A program made the translations under genes and the position numbers. Positions 1-33,945 of a stretch of DNA of 34,284 bases are shown here, piece after piece. Position 1 is the first letter of the stretch. Each line of letters begins with the position of its first letter. Where the stretch lies: NCBI RefSeq assembly GCF_001194135.2, contig NC_069000.1, positions 29,124,879-29,159,162 on the forward strand, read 5' to 3'. The notes under the pieces are model-generated. The model made no database searches and was not told the origin of the DNA. It saw only the letters and a list, made by a program, of their open reading frames with translations. This DNA is from Octopus bimaculoides (Eukaryota).

Positions 1-180
1 ATGTGTCACCCGTACATGAGCCAGTCCAGGGGCACCGGCAACGATCCTGCTCGAAAGATTTCATGTGTCGCCCGCACATGAGCCAATCCGGGGGCACCGG
101 CAACGATCCCGCTCAAAAGATTTCATGTGTCGCCTGCACATGAGCCAGTCCAGGGGCACTGGCAACGATCTCGCTCGAAA
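1..180 (-). repeat. Three tandem 62-bp units, the repeat module of the family C/RTE 3'-tail element; truncated by the window start
   Basis: Units start at 1, 63 and 125 (ATGTGTCRCCYGYACATGAGCCARTCCRGGGGCACYGGCAACGATC...). The reverse complement aligns by eye with the ~65-bp modules at 1057-1150 and 23205-23370. Confidence 0.8.
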
Positions 181-5524: not shown

Positions 5525-6840
5525 ATATATCTCAGTCCATCATCATTTCCTCTGTGAGCCCTAACAGCCTGAGATTGGTCCTCACCATGTCTTCCTAGAT
5601 CTCCCTCTTCCACAGGTACCACTCACTTTCAGTGATAGGCACTTCTGTATGCAGCTGTCTTTACTAATATGCATCACATGTCCAAACCAGCACATTCTTC
5701 TCTCCTGCATGCCACATTTAATTCCTCTTGTGCCCAACTTTTCTCTCAACACATTTGCACTTTGTCATTCATGCACGCTGATGTTGCACATCCAGTGGAG
5801 CATATTACCTTCATTCCTCTCCAGTATGCATGTTCTCTGCATTCAGAGTATAACCATTCACAGACAAGCATCATACAATCTACCTTTCACTCTGAGAGAG
5901 AATTCTTTTGTTGCCAACAAAGGCAGCAGCTCTCTGAACTTCCTCCATCTTATTCTAGAAACAATACTTTCAGAGCATCCACTACTGTTACTAATTTGGT
6001 CACCTAAGTAGCAGAAATTATCTACTTCCCCAAGAGAGCCTTCTGGGCATAAGTTTCATGTGCTCTTAGTGCTTATTCCTCCTACACATCTGCCACACAC
6101 AAAAGCGATCTTATCTGTTAATCTATCTGTAATTCCCCTGCATTTGTGTCCATAGCTTATTCTGGGTGCAGTGAATAGAATTACTTCCCACTCCTTTTCT
6201 ACATATTGAACAGGGTCATTTACCTGATGGAAAGGGAGTCTTATCTGCTTTCTTGCTAAAAACAACTTTGGTCTTTGCTAGGTTAAGTTTAAGGCCCTTT
6301 GATTCCAGGTTTTGCTTCCATACCTGGAACTTGTCCAATTCTGCAATAAGAGTGAGGTCATCAGCATATAGCAGTTCTCATAGGTATCCAGTTTTGAATT
6401 CCTGTTATGGCCCGGAGGACTATGATGAATAAGAGTGGACTATGAACCCCAACTTGTATGCTAAATTCATCACTGTATTCGTGGTCAACTCTCACCTTAC
6501 TGACAGCACCACTGAACATGGCTTCTTTGGCTCTAACAAGCCACTTCTCTACTCCTAGCTTTCTGAGAGACCACCAGATAACAGAGAAGGGAACTCTGTT
6601 GAAAGCTTTCTCCAGGTCAACGAAAGCTAAGTACAATGGTTTACTTTTGGCCAAACACTTTTCTTAAAACTGTCTCACTAGGAAGACAGCATCTGTGGTA
6701 CTTTCCCCAGGAACAAAACCAAACTGCATCTCACCTAGTTTAATTTTATTACTAATTAATTGAGCTATAACTCCCTCTGTAACTTTCATGACCTGGACCA
6801 GCAGTTTGATACTTCTGTAGTCATTTGTATCTAAAGCATT
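5525..6840 (-). mobile_element. RTE-clade LINE, decayed RT and C-terminal region
   Basis: Minus-strand motifs MQFGFVPGESTTDAVFLVRQ, PLYLAFVDLEKAFNRVP and LLYADDLTLIAE. The 5850-5900 segment matches 22615-22680. Confidence 0.93.
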
Positions 6841-7990: not shown

Positions 7991-8511
7991 CCTGACTGCA
8001 TAGGATCTGTTGTTGATATGTTACTTTGTACATGTACTATACCTGATTTGATGTGATCTGTGTGTGTGTGTCGCATGTGTAGCAACTTGCATCTCGCATC
8101 GTATTTCTTCTAAAATACTCCAGCAGATAAAAGATGAAAGATGTTCCAACTGTGATTGTCCAGTCCTATATTTCTGATATAGTGTATTGAGGAATACATT
8201 ATCCTTTGTTTGTTTTCTCTCTCTCTTTATTTTTTTCAAAGCTATTAAGATATAATTTGAATGAGATTTCGCTGCTAATTCTAGCAGGACACACAATTAT
8301 ATAGATGCTATAATTTGATTATGTTTCTTGCAAGAATTGATAACTGCATAAAAATAGAAGTATAGCAAAATATTGAAGCTTTAAATGCAGGCTTCTTGCA
8401 CCCTAAGGTCATGGGCATTGCTCTAATGCCTATTACTAATATGTGTGTGGAGGAAGGGGTATTAATGATTGCTTTTATGATCTTTTGTACCATCGACATG
8501 ATCTTTTGTGC

Positions 8512-9717
8512 ATGCAGATCCAGGAGAAGAACTGGGAGCAGCAGAAACCTGTCTTTTTCATCTTCTACGACTTAGAAAAAGCTTTCGACAGTGTCCCAAG
8601 AGAGGTCATGTGGGATATCCTACATCGTTACGGTTGTCCTGGAGGCTTCATTTCACTGATCAAGAGTTTCCATGATGACATGAGGGGAAGAGTCCTTTAT
8701 CAGACTGACATCTCTGAAGAATTCAAGATCACCTGTGGCCTGAAGCAGGGATGTGTTCTTGCTCCAACCCTGTTTTCTCTCTACATCGCTGCCATGCTCT
8801 CCGAAATTCCAACAGACAACCCCAGAGTGGAACTCAGATGTAGATTTGATGGTGGACTTTTCAACATCGCGCGTTTTCAATCAAGACGTCACTGTCGAGA
8901 GCACAAGATCACTGAGCTTCAATACGCTGATGATAATGCAGCCCCAGCTTCAACTGCAGAGGACCTCCAAACCTCAACAAACAACTTCAGCAGAGCTTAT
9001 CAAACCTTCGGCCTGAAAGTGAACATCGCCAAAACCAAAATGCTCACTCAACCAGCTCCACGTACCAACCTTGACAGCCCCAACATCACCATCAACAACC
9101 AATCAATTGAGGTCGTCGAGGATTTCTGCTATCTTGGAAGTTTTCTGTCACTCACTGCAGGATCTGGTAAGGATATCGAACATCGCATCCAATCAGGTCA
9201 TGCCTTTTTTGGTCGTCTCAAAACGAGGGTCTTTTGCAACAAGGATCTGGCATTTAAAATGAAGCTCATGGTCTATCGGGCTGTTGTATAAACTCTACTG
9301 TACGGGTGTGAAACCTGGACTGTTTACAATAAGGACATGAAGAAACTAGAGCGCTTCCATCAATCCAAACTTCGCTCTATCCTGAACATCAATTGGGAAG
9401 ATCGCATCACCAACAACTCTGTGCTTCAAAGATCAGGTCTCCTGAGCATCAAAGCCTTGATCATTGAACATCGTCTCCAATGGTCAGGTCACGTCTGTCG
9501 GATGAATGAACATCGCCTTCGCAAGATCTGTCTCTACAGTGAACTGTCTGAAGGAAAACATCCTCGTGGAGCCCCCTTGAAGCGGTACAAGGACCAACTC
9601 AAATCAACCCTGAAAAGCACCAACATCGACCCCACACATTGGGAAGATATCTCGGCAAACAGACCCCTCTGGAGACACACCAACAGAACGGGTTCTGCGG
9701 ACTTAGAAAAAGCCTGA
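8512..9717 (+). pseudogene. Reverse transcriptase ORF of the RTE LINE; single frame broken by TAA at 9289-9291
   Basis: ORFs 8443-9291 and 9337-9717 are in the same frame; RT homology starts near 8512. Confidence 0.9.
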
Positions 9718-9918
9718 GTCGCAAGAGCTGAACTCAAGAGACAAGAGAGAAAGCAGTGCCTTCTCCTTCCCAAACCAGCTCTTCTATCCCTTGTTCACAA
9801 TATCCCTGTATGTTTCATGCAACATCTGCGGAGCTATCTGCGGTTCAAACATCCAGGAAAATGAACTGGATTGCAAGCTCAGAAACATGAGACGTAGCCA
9901 ACTACTATTACTACTACT
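8512..9918 (+). mobile_element. RTE-clade (BovB-like) LINE, 5'-truncated, with (CTA)n tail
   Basis: RT region QIQEK...FYDLEKAFDSVPRE...GLKQGCVLAPTLFSLYIAAML...LQYADD, then LYGCETW and WSGHVCRM. Zinc-finger-like remnant CNICGAIC near 9815. Tail CTACTATTACTACTACT at ~9902-9918. Confidence 0.95.
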
Positions 9919-10236
9919 ATGTTGTTGAGTGAACCCTCGTGTTCCTGCTTGACATGTTGGTATAGTACTGATGAGCTCTTCTCTTCCTTGAATTCCCTCC
10001 AATGCTCATTAACCCTCTCTCCTATGCTACATGCTGTCGTGTCTACGTGTGTCATTGTCTTGTTTCTGCACTGTCTCTCAGTACATCTTATTCTATAGAC
10101 TATGTTCCTAGCTTTACAGTTTGTTTGTGGGCTTATTCTACACACCATACAGTTCTTATCAGTACAGGGGCTTCTATTAAAAGGTTGGGTTCTACCGATT
10201 AGGGATTTGATAAGGTTACCTAGCCTTTCTACAACT
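9919..10236 (-). mobile_element. Penelope-like element fragment (GIY-YIG endonuclease)
   Basis: ORF 9879-10307(-) contains CTDKNCMVC...NCKARNIVYRIRC...C...HVDTTACSIGERVNEH...SSVLYQHVKQEHEG. This fits the Cys-rich linker and the VY-I-C...R..EH...H..H pattern of PLE endonucleases. Confidence 0.8.
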
Positions 10237-10582
10237 ACTTTCCTTGCTAGCATAGGTAAGACAGTTTGACTGGAACAGGTAAGCAGGAGAGCTGCACCAG
10301 ATTCCAATCTAATTTGGCGCGATTTCTATGTCTGGATGCTATTCCTAACGCCAACCACTCCAAGAGTGCAATAGGTGCTTTTTACATCCCACTGGCATGG
10401 GTGCCATTTACATGACAGCAGTAATGGCTATGACTACGATTTCACAGGTGCAATTTAAATGGCAGTGGCAATGGCCTCAACTACGATTTCACCTGGCTTA
10501 ACAAGTCTTCTCAAGCACATATTGCCAAAGGTCTGTCACTTGTCATCGCACCCATGAGGCCCAACATTTGAAGATCATGCTA
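10237..10582 (-). mobile_element. 3' end of RTE LINE (ORF end plus family C tail)
   Basis: CTGGATGCTATTCCTAACGCCAACCACTCC and CACTTGTCATCGCACCCATGAGGCCCAACATTTGAAGATCATGCT are reverse complements of 23385-23420 and 22965-23012. Confidence 0.85.
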
Positions 10583-13724: not shown

Positions 13725-14417
13725 TCGCAACTGGAGTCAAGCAGGGATGTGTTATGTCAAACTTCCTGTTTCTTATGGTGATAGACTGGGTCATGTGAAG
13801 AACAACAGAAAGGCATAGGAATGGCATTAGATGGAAGATCTCAATTTGTGGATGATGTAGATTTGCTATCATCCACCTACAAACGTATCTGAAGCAAGAC
13901 ACAGAAAAATGTAAAACACTAATGATTAATGCCAAACAAGCTTGTGTGAGAATCGGTGATATTAAAAAGAAAGAGAAAGGGGGAATGGCATATAAAAAGA
14001 ACAGAATATCCAAAACCTGGAGAGTATTCTACAATCTAACAAAGGCATGGAGAAGCAAAGGTACAGGCAGCAAAATGAAGCTGATGCTGTTCAAGACATT
14101 GGTCTGGCCAGTATTACTCTACAGATATGAATACTGGAAAGTGACAAAAATGGAAGAAAAAACAATGGACAGCTTCCAATTCACATGCTTAAGGAGAATA
14201 CACAACATCAAGTGGTTGCAAAGAGTCTGAAATTACACAATTGAGATGAAAATGGGCATCAACAGGATCAGTGATGAAATAAGATTAAGTCGCTGGAACT
14301 GGATGAGGTAGGTCCTCAGACAAGATCAAGAAGGCAGTTGTATGGTAGCACCAAAGTGGCAGCCTGGGAGATAAAGAGCAGCAGGGTGTCCTAAAACCAC
14401 ATGGTGAAGGACCATTG
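13725..14417 (+). mobile_element. RTE-clade LINE fragment, internally deleted, running into a gap
   Basis: TGVKQGCVMSNFLFLMVIDWVM, KLMLFKTLVWPVLLY, FQFTCLRRIHNIKW, SRWNWM and PKTTW motifs, with stops. Confidence 0.88.
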
Positions 14418-17130: not shown

Positions 17131-17330
17131 CCCTTTAGCATTCAGATTATTCTGTGAAATGTAATGTTTTTTATTCACATTGTTTTGAATTAATCATGCA
17201 TTATCTCATAGCTTTGAGATTTCAATGATGTGACTATTTATTTTTAGAATGACATTGTAGAGCAGGCCAGTTTGAACATAAAACAAGTAGAATATTTGGG
17301 GCAGATGTGGCCAGTTTAAATGCTAAAGCA
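17131..17330. mobile_element. TTAA-flanked MITE (piggyBac-like ends), family E
   Basis: TTAA at 17127-17130 and 17331-17334. Termini CCCTTTAGCATT and AATGCTAAAGCA. Second copy at 28721-28948. Confidence 0.8.
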
Positions 17331-17969
17331 TTAAACAGTCAGAATAATTGCTGCAAGTGGAGTATGATCCTAGATCTGATGGATCAGGATTGACCCGGAT
17401 CTGAAAAACTACAAGATGAAAAATAAAACAGTGTCACAAAGTACATTTGGTGCGGAGACATGCTGGTCATTAACATTTATGAGTGGGTTAATAAGTGTAA
17501 GCAGACATTAAAAAATGTCTATTTACAAATTCTCCTGTCACAAAAAATTACAATAAGGAATGTAGAAAGTTTAATTATCCATTCTGATGGTTTATATTCC
17601 TTGATATGCGTATATTTTTAATTAAATAATCTGTAATAGCAATTAGTCAGCAATATTTGTAGGTTCACAGGTCAATCACTTTAAATGGAAAAATTTATTA
17701 AAACCAGAGGGGAAAATAATATTAGTATCTTTAATTATATTGGCTGTGATGATTATTATTATACATAATCCAAGTTGCACTAAATATTCACATGGACATA
17801 CACAAGTATTTATGGACTAAGAAATTGAATTAAGTCACTTGTAACTCATTCTCTCTGGGTATTACTGTCTCTTTCTCCACCTCACTCTTTGTCTATCAAT
17901 AATGTCAGCTGTCACTTCCTCTCTCCCTTTTCTTGTACTTACATGTGTGTGTGTGTGTGTGTGTGTGTT

Positions 17970-22614: not shown

Positions 22615-23532
22615 TCACTCAGAGTAAAAGGTAGACTGTATAACACGTGTGCGAACAGTCATGCTACATGGCAGTGAAACATGGGCTGTGACGGCTGAGG
22701 ACATGCATAAGCTTGCAAGGAATGAAGCTAGTATGCTCTGCTGGACGTGTAATATCAGTGTGCATACACGACAGAGTGTAAGCACCCTGACAGCAAAGTT
22801 GGACATAAGAAGCATCAGATGTGGTGTGCAAGAGAGACGACTGCACTGGTATGGTCAGGTGTTGCATATGGATGAGGGCAGCTGTGTGAAAAAGTGTCAC
22901 AACCTAGTAGTAGAGGGAACCTGTGGAAGAGGTAGACACAGGAAGAACTGGGATGAGGTGGTGAAGCACGACCTTCAAATGTTGGGCCTCATGGAGGCAA
23001 TGACAAGTGACTGAGACCTTTGGAGATATGCCGGGCTTGAGAAGACACAACAAGCCAAGTGAGACCGTAACCATGGCCTATGCCAGTGCAGCATAACCAC
23101 CCCATTTAAGAGTACCCTTCAATCATTGGGCAATGCAATAAACTGCGCTCATGAAGACCTGTCGAGTCAAATGAAGTCATTGTCATGGTCGATGACAGTA
23201 CTGCCTGATTGGCACCTGTACTGGTGGCACGTAAAAAGCACAATTTGAGTATGGTCATTGCCAGTGCCGCCTCACTGGATCCCATGCCAGTGGCATGTAA
23301 AAAGCACCATTCAAGCGTGGTCAATGCCAGTACTGCTTGACTGGCCCGCGTGCTGGTGGCACATAAAAAGCACCCACTACACGCTCAGAGTGGTTGGCAT
23401 TAGGAAGGGCATCCAGCTGTAGAAACTTTGCTAGATCAGATTGGAGCCTGGTGCAGCCTTCTGGCTTGCCAGCCCTCAGTCAAACTGTCCAACCCATGCC
23501 AGCATGGAAAGTGGACGTTAAATGACGATGGT
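22615..23532 (+). mobile_element. RTE LINE 3' end with complete 3' UTR (tandem modules and GAT tail)
   Basis: MLHGSETWAVTAED...RRLHWYGQVLHM...GTCGRGRHRKNWDEVV. The UTR has three ~65-bp modules (23205-23370) and ends GGACGTTAAATGACGATG. Confidence 0.92.
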
Positions 23533-24925: not shown

Positions 24926-25224
24926 GTTATAGTTTCTTCCTCTAATTTCCTTCATGATGCCTATGCATGTTCCAAATCATTCATTTTCAATATCCATTGC
25001 TCTCTCTCTCCTACCACCACCCAGCCTATCTCAATAACTACCTATTATTGTCTCTGTTATTCAGCTCAACTCAGTAACCCAACTTTTCTCTATGACTACC
25101 TTTCACTTGCTCTTTCTCACCTGTAACCATCATCATTCTCTCTCCCCAGTTCAGTCCAGGTTACTTATAACTATTATCTATCATTATCTCTTACCAGTAA
25201 CCATCTTTCATATTACTTCCTATC

Positions 25225-25672
25225 TATTGTATTTCCCTCGGGAGACTCGCAGAGATAACACAACGAGTTGTACAATNNNNNNNNNNNNNNNNNNNNNNNN
25301 NNNNNNNNNNNNNNNNNNNNNNNNNNNNNNNNNNNNNNNNNNNNNNNNNNNNNNNNNNNNNNNNNNNNNNNNNNNNACGGTAAAGTAAGCATGTAATCCT
25401 ACCGGCGACGCCAATAAACTCTGTTGCATTTCCCTCGAGAGACTCGCAGAGATAACACAACGAGTTGTACAATTTAATTATTACATTTATTATTCAATTA
25501 CATACAAAGAATGCACTCACCCAATGTTCGTTATGAATAAACAAGAATCATGTCCGCCATATCTATCAATGACCTTTTACTACGACAGTCACACAAGACA
25601 ACAACAATGAAACAATGAACTCAGACGAACCACTGTGACACACGGAACGTCAGACGAATAACATATCCAACA
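25225..25672 (-). mobile_element. LTR retroelement: 5' LTR 25422-25672, PBS 25395-25413, start of second LTR 25225-25276; interior hidden in a gap
   Basis: TGTTG...CAACA inverted termini. The same ~50 bp recur at 25225-25276 with 3 differences. AATCCTACCGGCGACGCCA resembles a tRNA 3' end including CCA. Confidence 0.7.
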
Positions 25673-26159: not shown

Positions 26160-26361
26160 GGTGGTGGGTTGGTAGAATTGTTACAGAGTCTTGTGCCATT
26201 TGTTCTGACTTTTTATGCTCTGAGTTCAAATTTCAACAAGGTCAACTTTGAACTTTGCATTTTATCCCTCCAGGTTCAATAAAACAAAGTTCCGAATTGG
26301 GATCATTATTATCAATTACCCACCACTTAAATTTCTTGCCTTGTGTCTTTTTTGGAAATAA
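26160..26361 (+). mobile_element. SINE family A, degenerate
   Basis: GGTGGTGGGTTGGTAGAATTGTTA...CTGAGTTCAAATTTC...CTTGCCTTGTG. Confidence 0.6.
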
Positions 26362-26405
26362 TTGTTGCCGCTGCTGTTGTTGTTGTTGTTGTTGTTGTTG
26401 TTGTG

Positions 26406-26441
<36 letters not shown>

Positions 26442-26445
26442 ACTG
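26362..26445. repeat. (TTG)n/(CTG)n compound trinucleotide repeat
   Basis: Direct reading; follows the SINE A tail. Confidence 0.95.
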
Positions 26446-26553
26446 CTTTTATGTGAGTTGTTCCAAGTCTCATTCAGAGACGTCTAATAACAGCAAGTTG
26501 GACATTGTACTGTGGATATCATTTATGAGTAATAATGATATATTACCAGGAAA

Positions 26554-26996
26554 CTAACTTAACCTTTGCACACTCATGATACTTATTTACAGCCACATAG
26601 GCTGAGCCATTGTCACTTAAATGTATTTGCTACAACCACAGAACAATACTAGTGGTGATATATCATTGGCAGAGATGGAACAACAAGCATTACCATCCCC
26701 ATTCGCTGGACTATGGACCTTTCAGATGTTAGTGTGGACACTGGGCCAACCATCACTTACTTCTTACAGAGAAGCAGGTGGATGATATGTCTAAGTTAAT
26801 AAATAGGAGGAAAAGAAGGAAGAAGAGGAAAGAAAGAGAGAAAGAAGTGAAGAATGTTAGTGGTGAGGAGGAGGAAACAGAAAGTGAGTGGAAAAAATAA
26901 ATGGAAATGAAGATTATGATGGAGTAAAAGAGAGAGAAAGAGAATTATGATGAGGAGGAGGAGGAAAAGGAGGATAGAGGTGATGGTGAGGAAAAA
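26554..26996 (+). repeat. 443-bp duplicate of 29401-29843, flanked by the 17-bp direct repeat GATATATTACCAGGAAA
   Basis: Direct repeat at 26537-26553 and 26997-27013. One mismatch by my reading (26797 T vs 29644 A). Confidence 0.93.
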
Positions 26997-27547
26997 GATA
27001 TATTACCAGGAAAGGAGATCAAACACTGAGAATTAAGATTCTGTTAAAAGATTCTTGCATTTAAATTGTTGATGAACCAGATTTAAATGAAATATAAAAC
27101 AGTTTTGTATAACAGGAACCAAATGACAGACAGTCTCTTAGACATGTTTGGTGTCAAAAGTTTGAAAAATTCAAACTACATCCCAGATGCCCTCTAGAAA
27201 TACTGTTATTTCTAGAGGGCATCTAAGTCTCCTTAAAACCAAAATAAAGAAAGGTTGGTCATGGTTAATAGGCTTTTGATCTTGGGTCTACTGAATAGGG
27301 ACCAGCCTAGGGTTAAATAGCAACATCCTATGTGTCAGGCCAAAACAGGGATGTAGGATGAAATTGACAACAGCTTCTCATCTGAAATAACAATATCAAC
27401 TTCCAATAACAACATATGCAGTAACATCATCATACCAGCTTCAGTTTGAACATCTGTACACACACACACATCTGTATGCATACAGGGTACATCTGCAAAC
27501 AGACACACAGACATACACACATAAATGGTCATACAAACGTGCAAATG

Positions 27548-27549
<2 letters not shown>

Positions 27550-27622
<73 letters not shown>
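27550..27622. repeat. (CA)n microsatellite
   Basis: Direct reading. Confidence 0.97.
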
Positions 27623-27625
<3 letters not shown>

Positions 27626-27676
27626 TGTACACACACATCTGAACACCCATGCACATCTGACATACACACTTACACA

Positions 27677-28243
27677 TATGAGAGCTGATGAAAAAGTTTC
27701 AAGACTGCTGCAACAAAAGGCAAACTTCAACACGTATTAATTTGGCATTTAATCTATTTCAAAGAATCCTCTTCTGAAGCCACACACTTTATCCAGCATC
27801 GTTTTCATTAATGAAAATAGTCCTGGAACTCCTTTTTGGGGGACAGTAAGCAACTGCCTTGTCACATTCTCTTGGATTTCCTTGGCATCTTAAAATCATG
27901 TTAGTGGTGCTTTCCACTGCAAAGACTGAACCTTGATTTTGGGTCATAGCCATGAACTCACAATTCATTTCCTGTTATGACTGTTTCCAAAAACTTTTCA
28001 TCCTGCTCAACACAGTCAAGAAAATCCCATGCAGTTGAAACCTGATCTTCTTTTCAAGACGACCACACTCAACATACTTGACTTCCAAGCATTGTTATAA
28101 ACAATGGAAATGAGCAAGAACATTATAACTTCGTGTTCATGCATGACAGAGTTCAAGGTTAGTCTGTGCCAAGCAGCTTCACTCTGCATACTTTAGCTCC
28201 ATTAAAATAGCAACAGTCCTGATATTTTTTATCAGTTCTTGTC
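27677..28243 (-). mobile_element. Mariner internal-deletion derivative with both TIRs
   Basis: TATGAGAGCTGATGAAAAAGTTTCAAGACTG and CAGTCCTGATATTTTTTATCAGTTCTTGT are degenerate TIRs. Minus-strand remnants FLETVITGNE..VHGYDP and KEFQDYF...WIKCVAS. Confidence 0.8.
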
Positions 28244-28653
28244 CAAATATATTCAAACACACACATACATAAAAACTAATAACCCAGTCTATAACTTCAC
28301 CAATATATGTTGTTATATGTTAGTGTTTGCTCTTCACCTGACAATAAATACATCTCCAAAAGAATAACCAACTCGCTTCACCTATCCGTTCATTACCACA
28401 GTGAAATAACTTCTTTTCACCATTTACCCATCCTCCTATCCTTTCATCATCATCAGCTAATGATGGTGATGATGATGATGATTAAGATGGCTCTTTCTTC
28501 TGACCTCCATCTTTTCATCTTCCCATTCTGCCTCCTCTTATTACAATCTCCTCCTCTCACTTTTATTCATCTCCCTTCTCCTCCTTTTCCTATTTTTTCA
28601 TCTAATGATCACACACAATCACACCTATTACTTTAAGTCAACTCTCAGAGTTA

Positions 28654-28712
28654 CCCAATTAGGATATACCAATTAGGATATACCAATTAGGATATACCCA
28701 ATTAGGATATAC
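28654..28712. repeat. 14-bp tandem repeat (CCAATTAGGATATA) x4
   Basis: Direct reading. Confidence 0.92.
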
Positions 28713-28720
28713 CTTCATAT

Positions 28721-28948
28721 TTAGCTTTTTAACACTCAAATTTGTCAGTCAAATGTAATACTTATTTATTCACATTATTTTGAATTAATCATGTATTATC
28801 CTGTGGCTTTGAAATTTCAATGATGTGATTGTTTAATATTAGAATGACATTGTAGGGGAGGTGTGAGAAGTGACATCTGGCCAGTTGGGACATAAAACAT
28901 GTTGAATATTTAGGCTGGAAATGGCTGGTTTAAATACTAAAGGGTTAG
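28721..28948. mobile_element. MITE family E, older copy
   Basis: Colinear with 17131-17330 (ATTCACATT...TTTGAATTAATCATG...AGAATGACATTGTAG...TAAATACTAAAGGGTTA). Confidence 0.8.
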
Positions 28949-28959
28949 AGATTGAGGTC

Positions 28960-29190
28960 AGGATACAACTGTTCCCTCATTGACTTCTGCACTGACTCTC
29001 ACAATGATTCTCATATTGACTCACTCATTGACTACCTTACTAAATCTCTTGTTGACTCATACACTGATTTCTACATTGTCTCCTAAATTGATTCCCTCAT
29101 TGAATCTTTTATTTGATCTCACATTGACTCCGATGCAGACTCTCACATTATCTCCCATACTGACTCTCAGATTGACTCCTCCATACTGAC
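28960..29190. repeat. Degenerate minisatellite/low-complexity tract (ATTGACTCTCAC-like)
   Basis: Recurrent TTGACT/TTGATT/CTCAC with multiple-of-6 periodicity. Confidence 0.7.
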
Positions 29191-29400
29191 TCTTTCTTTC
29201 TCCTTTCTATCACTAACCCCTTCTTTGTCCAGTTTCTAGCTGCAAATCTGTAAAGGACTTATTAAATTGGTTATGTTTCTCAAAGTAACGCTGGTCATGA
29301 AAAGATTTTTAACTAAACATTGCTGCAAGCTAGTGTAACAGTCATTAGTTTTACTCACTGTTGACAACAACAATCTATCCTTTTCTACTGTGGTACCCAA

Positions 29401-29843
29401 CTAACTTAACCTTTGCACACTCATGATACTTATTTACAGCCACATAGGCTGAGCCATTGTCACTTAAATGTATTTGCTACAACCACAGAACAATACTAGT
29501 GGTGATATATCATTGGCAGAGATGGAACAACAAGCATTACCATCCCCATTCGCTGGACTATGGACCTTTCAGATGTTAGTGTGGACACTGGGCCAACCAT
29601 CACTTACTTCTTACAGAGAAGCAGGTGGATGATATGTCTAAGTAAATAAATAGGAGGAAAAGAAGGAAGAAGAGGAAAGAAAGAGAGAAAGAAGTGAAGA
29701 ATGTTAGTGGTGAGGAGGAGGAAACAGAAAGTGAGTGGAAAAAATAAATGGAAATGAAGATTATGATGGAGTAAAAGAGAGAGAAAGAGAATTATGATGA
29801 GGAGGAGGAGGAAAAGGAGGATAGAGGTGATGGTGAGGAAAAA
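29401..29843 (+). repeat. Source copy of the 443-bp duplication
   Basis: No direct repeat at its flanks; its purine-rich tract continues uninterrupted to ~29900. Confidence 0.9.
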
Positions 29844-30730
29844 GAAGGAGCTGGGCAGAGAAAAGAGGAAGAATTTGTAGTAGTAGTAGTAGTAGCAGCA
29901 GTAGCAGAAAATGTGTCCATAAAGAAGTGACCTTAATTAGAAGCAGGTACAGCGTTATGGGGTTACTGAGCAATTTTACAGCTCCTCCCTATTTCTCCCT
30001 CTCTCCCACACCTCATTTTTATCCCATACATTCCATCATTTTTACACACATATTCACACACACACACACACACACATACATTCTCATATTCACAGCTGTA
30101 CACACACATAACATGACACACACCCACAGCAGCTTGATCATTCCTTTAAGTAGAACAGGTCATATTGGTGGCAACTGTGTGTGTGTGTGTGAGTGTGTGT
30201 ACGCGTGTTTATATTCATACATACATCCACACATTATATTCCAGTGCATAACACCCAATATTGCTCCAACCTCATTTTCATCAGATTTCTATTTACACTA
30301 ATTACTTCTCAAAATCTCAGATAATATTTCACATCTATGGGTTCTTACCCCTCCCCTTCTCTCTCCCCATCTTTTTCCTTTTCACATTCTTCTCTCTCCT
30401 CCCTTTCCCTCTTATATATATTTGTGTGTGTGTGTATGTATAAATATGCCCATATATGTATATATATCTATGTTTAGCTATCAAATATATATACATGTGT
30501 GTGTGTGTGTGTATACACATATAGAGTATAAGTGTATTTGGTATTTTACTAATTCAATTATTTATTCAGAAACTTTTCAAGAAAATTCATTTAAGGAGCC
30601 CCAATGCATCCTAACTTACGTGCACACACACACATACTTCAAATAAATAACTACACAGAAATAAAATTCTCCAGTGCATATGTATATATGATTATATACT
30701 TAAATACATACATGCATACATGTGTAAGAT

Positions 30731-31201: not shown

Positions 31202-32517
31202 TATGAGGGAGAGTCAAAAATTATACGCACTCTTGTTTTTTCAAAAAAATTATATGCACTCTTGTTTTTTCAAAGTATTTACACAAAAGCAATGGATAAA
31301 CAAGTATGTCATTTTTCTATATAGTCTCCTTCCTGCACTTGGTCCAGTGGTCCACAAACTTGTATGTCCCCTCCAAGAAGGTTTTCAGTTGGTTGTGCAA
31401 CCATTTCTATACCGTTTCCTTCACATCTTCATCCATAGGAAATCGATGACCTCGTAAACCATCTTTGACCGGTCCAAAGATATGATAGTTGGAAGGAACA
31501 AGATCTGGGCTGTAGGCAGGGTGTTCCAACAACTCAAAACCCAATTGGTTAATGATTTCAACGGTTTGGGCAGCCATGTGTGGGTGTGCATTGTCATGCA
31601 GCAACAAAACTTTCTTCGACAATAGGCTTCGGCATTTGGTGTGAATTGCTGGCTTTGGTTTGTTGGCAAACAAAGGAGTGTATCTTGCACTGTTGATTGT
31701 ACACCACTTTTCCAGGCAGTCTTTGAGTACAGGCCCTTCTGAGTTCCCAAAAAAGGGTTAGCATCACCTTTCTTGCGAAAAACTGAGACTTGAATTTCTT
31801 CATCACTGGTGAGCCAGAATGTTTTCACACCATACTGTCTTTTGGATTCTGCCTCATAATGATGGACCCACGTTTCATCTCCTGAGACTATTCTGCTCAA
31901 AAATTGCTTGCCCTCATTGTAGCGATTAAGTAAATGTTGGCAGACCTCAAGATATTTGCACTTGTGCTCTGCAGTAAGATCTCTTAGCACCCATCTTGCA
32001 CTTTATGGAATCTGAGCTCACCGTAGATGATTTGATAGGCAGAACCATGTCTAATCTGCAGATGATCATTCATCAATGATAACTCACCAGCTCACCATTA
32101 ACATCTCTTGAGCTTGCTGAATCTCATCAGTAGTGGAGGTTGATGGACGTCCTGTTCCCTCTTTGTGCATCATGCTTGTCCAGCCACTTTTAAACTTCTC
32201 GATCCACTCATACACACTTCTATGTGATAGTGCTGCCCCGTATTGTGCTAAAATCTTCCAATGAATTTCAGCACCTGACACACCTTCCAACCAGAGAAAT
32301 TGGATCACTGCTCTTTGTTCTTCTTTGGTGTACATTGCTAGTGGAGCAGCCATGCTTACACAGTAAAACCAGAAAGAAAAATGGTGTGACCAGGCTCAAA
32401 CTTCGATCATGTGACCACAGTAGTACCAACTATAAACATGCATGCACAGAAAGCAGTGTGACAATAATAAAGACATGTTATGACGAAAGTACAGATAATT
32501 TTTTACTTCCCCTTATA
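31202..32517 (-). mobile_element. Full-length mariner (irritans/Hsmar2-like), decayed, TA-bounded
   Basis: TIRs TATGAGGGAGAGTCAAAAATTATACGCA and TACAGATAATTTTTTACTTCCCCTTATA; about 1.3 kb. Confidence 0.93.
31309..32353 (-). pseudogene. Mariner DD34D transposase with frameshifts and stops
   Basis: MAAPLAMYTKEEQRAVIQFLW...SVYEWIEKFKSG, IVSGDETWVHHYEAESKRQ, LLLHDNAHPH, PAYSPDLVPSNYHIFG (third catalytic D read as N). Confidence 0.92.
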
Positions 32518-33429: not shown

Positions 33430-33945
33430 TGCCCCCCTGATCTGAAGATCATTCAACCAACCTACCCATGCCCTCTTCTCAATCCCGACCACACGCCTTA
33501 ACTTGTCTCATAATCAGCCAACCAGTGAGGCAGGCACCGCTCCCTCTGTGGGACTTCAGGACTGGCCTCAGTTCCTGGCATGTTGCTGCTGGCTTCGTCC
33601 TCTTGTCCATTACTGTTAGCCCCATCATCCATCACAGTGATGATTCTGCGCACATCCAAAGCATGTCGTGGCATGCCATCTATGGACACATTGTTCCTCA
33701 AATTCACAGAGGTTATTGTCCCCTTTCCCCACTGTGATGTGCACCACGCATTTGGGGGTTTAACCCAGACTTCTTCCCTGACCTGCACAAAGGCATGCTC
33801 TTTCCCTTCTGTGGGATGCGGTGACGCAGTACATGGATGTCTCCAATCGTACTTGAATATTGCCCTGTGTGACACTGACACCTCAGCCTGTCCCGTCCCG
33901 GGTGACATATACCAATTTAGTAGAAAGTGGGTTATACATCTTTAG
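33430..33945 (-). mobile_element. Gypsy-type LTR retrotransposon: integrase C-terminus and polypurine tract
   Basis: HRAIFKYDWRHP...EEVWVKPPNAWCTSQWGKGTITSVN...VSIDGMPRHALDVRR...RERCLPHWLADY*. Minus strand then reads AGGGGGGCA|TG at ~33430; a probable LTR continues to ~33140. Confidence 0.8.

What the first reader, a model, noticed from the sequence alone, without database searches (positions are those of the whole stretch)
26537..29843. 443 bp of local non-TE DNA copied 2.85 kb away into a site with a perfect 17-bp target-site duplication
Seen: 26554-26996 equals 29401-29843 in the same orientation, with one substitution by my reading. Only the upstream copy is bracketed by GATATATTACCAGGAAA (26537-26553 and 26997-27013). 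Each junction has 2 nt of microhomology with the source flanks (AA left, GA right), and the insert ends in GAGGAAAAA with no poly-A tail. I recognise no TE in the segment. Established: TSDs of this length are typical of non-LTR retrotransposon endonuclease/TPRT insertions, and templated insertions also arise during break repair. Inference: a recent capture of neighbouring sequence, either a nascent transcript reverse-transcribed by an RTE/L1 enzyme or DNA-templated repair of a staggered break. That would be a route to local duplication in this genome.
Basis: partly seen in the sequence, partly recalled or inferred. Interest (0 to 1): 0.78.

Follow-up and report, generated by a model that had tools for sequence, protein, structure and literature searches.

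The report
Recent local copy-and-paste of unique DNA
A 443-base stretch of ordinary, non-mobile DNA in what looks like an octopus genome was recently copied 2.85 kb upstream and is flanked by a 17-base duplication of its landing site; this is a real but single example of a known kind of event, and its mechanism is not settled.

Summary
26552-26998 equals 29399-29845 over 447 nt without gaps, with one mismatch (26797 T, 29644 A). GATATATTACCAGGAAA occurs only twice in the window, exactly bracketing the upstream copy. Junction microhomologies are AA and GA.

The segment has no TE hallmarks: no further copy in the window, no TIR, LTR ends, tRNA head or poly-A, and no protein or Rfam relatives. 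The source copy has no TSD, and its right edge lies inside a continuous purine-rich tract, so the copied ends look arbitrary.

It is most likely a genuine, young, local duplicative insertion. The mechanism is unresolved. I favour DNA-templated copying by two microhomology-mediated template switches (a forward jump 26553→29401, then a back jump 29845→26537). The reasons are that the source is close by and in the same orientation, there is no poly-A or LINE tail, and both junctions show microhomology. LINE-mediated TPRT on a local transcript is the main rival: a 17-bp TSD is typical of it, and there is a weak RTE-like target motif on the minus strand.

Genome-wide copy number, read support and the empty site could not be tested with these tools. 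This is a known kind of event (templated insertion) and of modest interest.

The parts
26537..26553 (.). Left copy of the 17-bp target-site duplication GATATATTACCAGGAAA. Its last 2 nt (AA) are also shared with the source flank at 29399-29400.
26554..26996 (+). Inserted copy, 443 nt. Identity with the source runs from 26552 to 26998. The only difference is T at 26797.
26997..27013 (.). Right copy of the 17-bp duplication. Its first 2 nt (GA) are also shared with the source flank at 29844-29845.
27014..29400 (.). 2,387 bp between the copies, not duplicated. It contains an 18-bp-stem palindrome (27185-27224), (CA)37 (27550-27623), a sequence that looks to me like a mariner transposase remnant on the minus strand (about 27740-28250; not tested), and 14-bp and 12/24-bp tandem arrays.
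29401..29843 (+). Source copy, same orientation, with no flanking duplication. A at 29644.
29640..29915 (+). Continuous purine-rich tract (72-97% purine per 40-nt bin from 29620 to 29899). The right end of the copied segment (29843/29845) falls in the middle of it, so that end coincides with no natural sequence boundary.

Best explanation
This is a genuine, evolutionarily very recent, local duplicative insertion of unique non-mobile DNA, made by DNA-templated synthesis with two microhomology-mediated template switches (FoSTeS/MMBIR-like, or synthesis-dependent repair of a break). A growing 3' end that had just copied ...GATATATTACCAGGAAA left its template and re-annealed through its terminal AA 2.85 kb further along the same strand, at 29399-29400. 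It copied 29401-29845, left again inside a purine-rich tract, and re-annealed through its terminal GA at 26537-26538 of the original site, 17 nt behind where it had left. Re-copying those 17 nt produced the apparent target-site duplication. The net result is one extra co-oriented 443-nt copy with the source left intact. Shown: the two copies, the 17-bp duplication, the 2+2 nt microhomologies, the absence of TE hallmarks and of poly-A, and the arbitrary ends. Inferred: that the template was DNA rather than RNA, and that polymerase switching produced the 17-bp duplication rather than a staggered cut.
For: (1) The source is 2,847 bp away on the same strand and in the same orientation. That is the expected range for local template switching. 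Retrotransposition in trans has no reason to land next to its source.
(2) Both junctions carry 2 nt of microhomology. The chance of at least 2 nt at both junctions is about 0.024. Microhomologies of 1-3 bp are the reported signature of insertions attributed to FoSTeS/MMBIR (PMC5120786).
(3) No poly-A or poly-T lies at either end, and no AATAAA lies within 95 nt of the plus-strand 3' end.
(4) No stable 3' hairpin exists in either orientation, and neither end resembles any LINE or SINE tail in the window. A stringent-type LINE would therefore have no recognition signal.
(5) The right end falls inside a purine-rich tract of about 275 bp. The interval also holds (CA)37, (TGY)n and an 18-bp-stem palindrome. 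These are sequences generally held to impede replication forks (established knowledge; their role here is inference).
(6) The whole structure can be written as one forward jump and one back jump on a single template.
Against: A clean 17-bp flanking duplication is the classic product of LINE endonuclease staggered nicking; the median L1/Alu TSD is 15 bp (PMC9996862). It is not the usual outcome of replicative insertion: in the human 'basic complex insertions' a deletion, not a duplication, was always found at the insertion site (PMC5120786). Read on the minus strand, the target shows a TSD starting with T and TTT at P-8 to P-10, a weak match to the RTE signature (PMC6007223). LINE reverse-transcriptase fragments are abundant in the window, and RTE activity is reported in Octopus (PMC9115989). 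Templated insertions of several hundred bp are longer than most documented MMBIR or Pol-theta patches. Proximity is partly an ascertainment effect, because only local sources are visible in a 34-kb window.
Confidence: 0.45

Rival explanations
1. LINE-mediated target-primed reverse transcription of a local, non-TE transcript. A LINE endonuclease of a clade that does not depend on poly-A (RTE-like) nicks the two strands 17 bp apart. One 3'-OH primes on a nearby, perhaps nascent, RNA through 2 nt of pairing. The cDNA is joined at the other end by 2-nt microhomology, and fill-in gives the 17-bp TSD.
For: The perfect 17-bp TSD lies within the typical LINE range; the L1/Alu median is 15 bp (PMC9996862). 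Overlaps of 1-2 bp at the 3' junction are described for RTE, CR1 and L2 (PMC6007223), and microhomology at the 5' junction is usual for truncated LINE copies (established knowledge). In minus orientation the TSD starts with T and TTT lies at P-8 to P-10, partly matching the RTE signature. A variant AAUAAG lies 28 nt upstream of the minus-strand 3' end. RT fragments are frequent in the window, and recently active RTE LINEs are reported in Octopus (PMC9115989).
Against: There is no poly-A in either orientation and no TTTT/A nick site, so the L1-type route (class 1 TSIP, PMC5110952) fails three of its four criteria. RTE-type LINEs mobilise RNAs that share their 3' tail (PMC6007223). The segment has no similarity to any LINE or SINE tail in the window, no microsatellite-like tail and no 3' hairpin. 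Landing 2.85 kb from the source in the same orientation is unexplained unless a cis or nascent-RNA bias is assumed, and I found no precedent for one. The RTE motif match is weak: three Ts rather than about five, at a single site.
Confidence: 0.27
2. Ordinary mobile element. The 443-mer is a non-autonomous retroposon, or the terminal or internal part of a longer LINE. The two copies are independent or master-and-daughter insertions of a multicopy family.
For: The window is dense with SINE, LINE and mariner remnants. The TSD-flanked copy looks like a retroposon insertion. The genome-wide copy number could not be measured.
Against: The unique 245 nt has no other copy in 34 kb that holds many members of other families. 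There is no tRNA or other Rfam RNA, and no TIR, LTR termini or poly-A. A six-frame search found no protein relatives in 5.8 billion proteins, and the 54-aa ORF found none in 1.84 billion representatives. The source copy has no TSD within the window at up to 3 mismatches, and its right edge is embedded in a continuous purine tract. A divergence of 0.2% between two copies 2.85 kb apart, when every other family pair is 3-26% diverged, argues for direct local descent.
Confidence: 0.1
3. Assembly artefact. In a gapped short-read scaffold, gap closure or haplotype merging placed a second copy of reads from about 3 kb away between two contig ends that overlapped by 17 bp.
For: The scaffold has five N gaps. 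The nearest gap (25277-25376) is flanked by a 54-bp repeat at 94% identity, a pattern typical of falsely duplicated haplotypic contig ends. A near-perfect 447-bp repeat is hard for short-read assemblers to resolve.
Against: There are no Ns within 1.2 kb. All four junction sequences are distinct and unique, so reads must have existed for each. Gap closers join by overlap, not by 2-nt microhomology. The copies differ at one base. A 17-bp overlap is shorter than the usual k-1.
Confidence: 0.1
4. Two separate events: a tandem duplication of the 2,847-bp unit 26997-29843, followed by a 2,387-bp deletion inside the first copy that removed everything between the 17-mer and the 443-mer.
For: The sequence is formally [17-mer + 443][17-mer + 2387 + 443]. 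Junction 29845|26537 is a tandem-duplication junction and junction 26553|29401 is a deletion junction, each with 2-nt microhomology.
Against: This needs two independent rearrangements within the time in which only one substitution accumulated in 447 nt. The deletion would also have to start exactly at the 17th base of the unit. A single two-switch event is more parsimonious.
Confidence: 0.05

Closest known systems
FoSTeS/MMBIR templated insertions (replicative template switching at microhomology; Lee, Carvalho & Lupski 2007 and Hastings et al. 2009, as cited in PMC5120786; PMC8421209)
   Same: The source is retained and a copy gained. Each junction has 1-3 nt of microhomology. The template is nearby in cis and two switches are involved.
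   Different: The documented germline cases are mostly kb to Mb in size, or are short patches under 100 bp, and usually come with a deletion at the insertion site. Here the insert is 443 nt with a neat 17-bp duplication of the target.
Class 1 templated sequence insertion polymorphisms (L1 ORF2p acting on non-L1 RNA; Onozawa & Aplan, PMC5110952)
   Same: Non-TE sequence of a few hundred bp is inserted with a TSD of at least 5 bp, and the donor stays intact.
   Different: Class 1 TSIPs have a 10-40 nt poly-A, AATAAA 10-30 nt upstream of it, a TTTT/A target and a distant donor. None of these is present here.
RTE-clade LINE/SINE integration (Nishiyama & Ohshima 2018, PMC6007223)
   Same: No poly-A is needed. 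There is 1-2 bp of overlap at the 3' junction. On the minus-strand reading, the TSD starts with T about 10 nt downstream of a short T run.
   Different: The inserted sequence has no RTE-type 3' tail or microsatellite-like end. The T run is only 3 nt. On the plus-strand reading the signature is absent.
Orphan 3' transductions of LINEs (severely 5'-truncated read-through transcripts)
   Same: Unique flanking DNA is inserted with a TSD and without any TE sequence.
   Different: These need an active LINE directly upstream of the source and normally a poly-A. No LINE 3' end was recognisable next to the source on either strand.
Class 2 TSIPs and polymerase-theta templated insertions at double-strand breaks
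   Same: There is microhomology at the junctions and the patch is templated.
   Different: Class 2 TSIPs lack TSDs and show microdeletions. Pol-theta patches are typically tens of bp (established knowledge).

Membership tests
Class 1 TSIP / L1-type retrocopy | Target-site duplication of at least 5 bp | tested here: met
   Perfect 17 bp
Class 1 TSIP / L1-type retrocopy | Untemplated poly-A of 10-40 nt at the 3' end | tested here: not met
   The insert ends GAGGAAAAA, which is templated by the source. There is no poly-T at the other end.
Class 1 TSIP / L1-type retrocopy | Polyadenylation signal 10-30 nt upstream of the 3' end | tested here: not met
   On the plus strand, AATAAA lies 95 and 193 nt upstream. 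On the minus strand there is only the variant AATAAG, 28 nt upstream, and no tail.
Class 1 TSIP / L1-type retrocopy | First nick at 5'-TTTT/A-3' | tested here: not met
   The nicked strands would read ATATATC/ATTATTA or CCAGGAAA/GGAGATC.
RTE-type retroposition | TSD starts with T about 10 nt downstream of a T stretch | tested here: inconclusive
   Plus orientation: P1 = G, not met. Minus orientation: P1 = T, with TTT at P-8 to P-10 against about 5 Ts expected. This is a single site.
RTE-type retroposition | Template carries the LINE's 3' tail or a microsatellite-like end | tested here: inconclusive
   No similarity to any LINE or SINE in the window and no terminal microsatellite or hairpin. 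No consensus of this genome's RTE was available.
Transposable element (any class) | Multiple genomic copies with the same termini | not testable with these tools
   Only two copies occur in 34 kb. There were no matches in the metagenome, prokaryote-genome or viral collections and no protein matches. The host genome is not searchable here.
Transposable element (any class) | Structural hallmarks (TIRs, LTR TG..CA ends, tRNA/7SL/5S head, poly-A or microsatellite tail, coding capacity) | tested here: not met
DNA transposon | TSD of a fixed 2-11 bp together with TIRs | tested here: not met
   The TSD is 17 bp and there are no TIRs.
FoSTeS/MMBIR templated insertion | Microhomology at the breakpoint junctions | tested here: met
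   AA and GA. The chance of at least 2 nt at both junctions is about 0.024.
FoSTeS/MMBIR templated insertion | Template close by in cis, with the donor retained | tested here: met
   2,847 bp away, same strand, both copies present
FoSTeS/MMBIR templated insertion | DNA (not RNA) template; replication- or repair-associated origin | not testable with these tools
   The sequence alone cannot tell a DNA template from an unspliced RNA template.

The most novel reading that the evidence does not exclude
In this cephalopod genome a LINE machinery that does not depend on poly-A (RTE-type) regularly reverse-transcribes nascent local transcripts in cis and pastes them a few kb away. That would create a recurrent class of TSD-flanked, tail-less local duplicates, a retrotransposon-driven route to local sequence duplication not described so far.
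Probability: 0.1. Interest if true: 0.6.

Novelty: new member of a known kind. Interest (0 to 1): 0.3.

Why it matters
On its own this is one young dispersed local duplication in repeat-rich, apparently non-coding DNA, with no gene or function attached. Its value is as a clean specimen. It has unique sequence, intact junctions and almost no decay, so the mechanism can still be read from it. If a genome-wide scan finds many events of the same kind, their source distances, orientations, flank-duplication lengths and target motifs would show which process generates small local duplications in cephalopod genomes: replication template switching or LINE enzymes acting on local RNA. Those genomes are known for their repeat expansions.

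Tried and rejected
External evidence was sought and none was obtainable.
- Exact-pattern scans found nothing: metagenome contigs with a 48-mer and a 23-mer, and prokaryotic genomes and viral contigs with a 30-mer. None was expected from the last two.
- Seven exact-product look-ups of window ORFs in and around the locus were all 'not on record'. These included the ORF that spans the left junction. No allelic or orthologous empty site could therefore be fetched.
- The six-frame protein search of the unique part and the full HMMER search of its 54-aa ORF gave no hits.

Other attempts that led nowhere:
- I tried to obtain comparator TSDs from SINE copies in the window. The copies are old (75-87% identical) and composite, with no definable ends.
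- I looked for a paralogous empty site for the joined flanks inside the window and found none.
Reading the translations by eye showed no RT or endonuclease remnant next to the source.

Explanations rejected:
- DNA transposon or MITE: no TIRs, and the TSD is too long.
- Solo LTR: no TG..CA ends, and the TSD is too long.
- SINE: no Pol III head.
- L1-type processed retrocopy: no poly-A.
- Chance: about 4^-17 for the flanking repeat.
Full report
OBSERVATION. At an offset of 2,847 bp the window is identical from 26552 to 26998 versus 29399 to 29845 (447 nt, no gaps). There is one mismatch, 26797 T versus 29644 A, and identity collapses immediately outside. BLAST gives 99.776% over 447 nt. Every other repeat pair in the window is 74-97% identical. 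GATATATTACCAGGAAA occurs only at 26537 and 26997, on either strand. A census of all exact direct repeats of at least 14 bp lying within 8 kb of each other shows it is the only pair that is neither part of a repeat family nor a tandem array. The 443-nt core plus two 2-nt microhomologies (AA on the left, GA on the right) accounts for the 447 nt. Depending on how those 4 nt are assigned, the strictly target-derived duplication is 13-17 bp.

CONTEXT. The window is 38% G+C and full of microsatellites, SINE-like families and decayed LINE and mariner fragments. It comes from a gapped scaffold with five N runs; the nearest is 25277-25376. The longest RT fragment (8443-9291) finds an Octopus bimaculoides protein as its best hit at 65% identity. 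The mariner-like ORF at 31421-31990 finds Octopus sinensis proteins among its hits. The host is therefore probably an octopod, but this is not proven. No host exon was recognised, and the locus looks intergenic or intronic.

IS THE SEGMENT A MOBILE ELEMENT? Nothing says so.
- Its unique 245 nt has no further copy in the window even under very permissive BLAST. Only its purine-rich half hits other low-complexity DNA.
- It contains no tRNA or Rfam RNA.
- It has no TIRs, no LTR-type ends and no terminal poly-A or microsatellite.
- It has no protein relatives, either in a six-frame search of 5.8 billion proteins or for its 54-aa ORF against 1.84 billion representatives.
- The downstream copy has no flanking duplication. 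The 17-mers abutting it on either side occur nowhere else in the window with up to 3 mismatches.
- The right end of the copied segment lies in the middle of a continuous purine-rich tract running from about 29640 to 29915, so the end coincides with no natural boundary.

These points fit an arbitrary piece of native sequence that was copied. The searchable collections do not hold this genome, and none of seven window ORFs is on record.

IS IT AN ARTEFACT? Caution is justified. The neighbouring gap is flanked by a 54-bp repeat at 94% identity, which looks like falsely duplicated haplotypic contig ends. At the finding itself, however, there are no Ns. All four junction sequences are unique and mutually consistent. 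The copies differ at one base. The junctions have only 2 nt of overlap, which overlap-based gap closers do not produce. I put an artefact at about 0.1.

ANATOMY AND MECHANISM. The structure can be read in two ways.

(a) Staggered nicks. Nicks 17 bp apart leave two 3' ends that prime on a foreign template. This is the geometry of LINE target-primed reverse transcription, and also of DNA-templated repair of a staggered break.

(b) Two template switches on one DNA template. The first is forward, from 26553 to 29401 through AA. The second is back, from 29845 to 26537 through GA. The return lands 17 nt behind the exit point, so those 17 nt are copied twice. Formally this is [17 + 443][17 + 2387 + 443], a 2,847-bp tandem unit whose first copy lacks its central 2,387 bp.

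EVIDENCE BEARING ON RNA VERSUS DNA.

Against a poly-A-dependent LINE:
- There is no poly-A or poly-T at either end.
- The nearest plus-strand AATAAA lies 95 nt from the end.
- There is no TTTT/A site.

Three of the four class 1 TSIP criteria (PMC5110952) therefore fail.

Against a stringent LINE such as RTE:
- The segment lacks any LINE-like tail.
- It lacks a terminal microsatellite.
- It lacks a 3' hairpin. RTE-mobilised SINEs share the LINE's 3' end (PMC6007223).

For a LINE:
- A 17-bp TSD is typical. The median for L1-driven Alu insertions is 15 bp (PMC9996862).
- Overlaps of 1-2 bp at the 3' junction are reported for RTE, CR1 and L2.
- On the minus-strand reading the TSD starts with T, with TTT at P-8 to P-10. 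This is a weak match to the RTE signature of a T about 10 nt downstream of a T stretch.
- Recently active RTE elements are reported in Octopus (PMC9115989).

For DNA-templated switching:
- The source is 2.85 kb away, on the same strand and in the same orientation.
- Both junctions use microhomology. The chance of at least 2 nt at both is about 0.024.
- One switch occurs inside a long purine tract. The interval also contains (CA)37, (TGY)n and an 18-bp-stem palindrome with z = -8.5. Such sequences are generally held to stall forks; their role here is inference.

Against DNA-templated switching:
- The human insertions attributed to these mechanisms usually carry a deletion, not a duplication, at the target (PMC5120786).
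- 443 nt is long for a templated patch.

Proximity has to be discounted somewhat, because a reader of a single 34-kb window can only detect local sources. Even so, under random trans retrotransposition a local landing is very improbable per event, whereas under template switching every event is local.

I therefore favour the DNA-templated two-switch model (0.45) over LINE TPRT on a local transcript (0.27). An ordinary TE (0.10), an artefact (0.10) and a two-step duplication-then-deletion history (0.05) follow.

AGE. One difference in 447 nt gives 0.22% divergence, with a Poisson 95% interval of 0.006-1.25%. The 17-mers are identical. The event is recent, unless gene conversion has homogenised the copies.

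COMPARISON AND VERDICT. It works like a templated insertion or dispersed local duplication. It fails membership of class 1 TSIPs (no poly-A, poly-A signal, TTTT/A site or distant donor) and of class 2 TSIPs (it has a TSD). It is inconclusive for RTE-type integration. It meets the testable criteria of FoSTeS/MMBIR (microhomology, a nearby cis template, a retained donor), with an atypical neat 17-bp flank duplication.

I rate it a new member of a known kind. Interest is 0.3.

Noticed in passing
window 25223-25276 and 25420-25473 (flanking the N gap 25277-25376): The 54 nt just before the 100-N gap recur 43 nt after it at 94% identity. This looks like falsely duplicated haplotypic contig ends (or a real 197-bp tandem repeat) and is a warning about local assembly quality.
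   Followed up: partly
window 27185-27224: A near-perfect palindrome, GATGCCCTCTAGAAATA...TATTTCTAGAGGGCATC, with an 18-bp stem (RNA fold -29.2 kcal/mol, z = -8.5). It lies 170 bp downstream of the insertion site. It could be a hairpin or cruciform, or a tiny foldback element.
   Followed up: partly
window 26363-26447 and 29878-29908: A (TGT)n(TGC)n array lies 90 bp upstream of the insertion site, following a SINE-like sequence (about 26160-26350). Its complement-type array, (GTA)n(GCA)n, lies 35 bp downstream of the source copy. The two are not true inverted repeats of each other, and the resemblance is probably coincidental low complexity.
   Followed up: partly
window 31421-31990 (-) and about 27740-28250 (-): The 189-aa ORF at 31421-31990 has relatives carrying Pfam PF01359, including Octopus sinensis proteins, so it is a decayed mariner/Tc1-type transposase remnant. 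The second stretch lies between the two copies and looks to me like another such remnant; this was not tested.
   Followed up: partly
window 8443-9717 (+), 6361-6654 (-), 13922-14230 (+), 22649-23014 (+): Decayed non-LTR reverse-transcriptase fragments. RVT_1 is confirmed for the first (E = 7.8e-22) and marginal for the second (19 bits, below the 29.6 cut-off). The best relative of the first is an O. bimaculoides protein at 65% identity. The clade (RTE or other) was not determined.
   Followed up: partly
window 9879-10307 (-): A 142-aa ORF with a Cys-rich, GIY-YIG-like motif pattern that recalls Penelope-like element endonucleases (from memory). It had no Pfam hit.
   Followed up: no
window 33498-33908 (-): A 136-aa ORF that resembles the C-terminal tails of retroelement integrases (from memory). 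It had no Pfam hit and is not on record.
   Followed up: no
window 1-180; 23184-23374 (with 1058-1306 and 10237-10400): A 62-bp tandem repeat lies at the window start. A 66-bp tandem repeat belongs to a dispersed family with three copies in the window (86% identity between two of them). It may be a satellite-like part of a SINE or LINE.
   Followed up: no
window 28655-28713 and 28970-29193: Two tandem arrays lie in the interval just upstream of the source copy: a 14-bp array (CCAATTAGGATATA, 4 copies) and a 12/24-bp array (CTCATTGACTCC-like). A dispersed repeat at 28728-28956 matches 17134-17342.
   Followed up: no
window 26797 versus 29644: The single substitution turns AAGTAA (a stop in the small ORF of the source) into AAGTTA in the copy. 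That extends a low-complexity 40-aa ORF (26778-26900). It is almost certainly meaningless.
   Followed up: no
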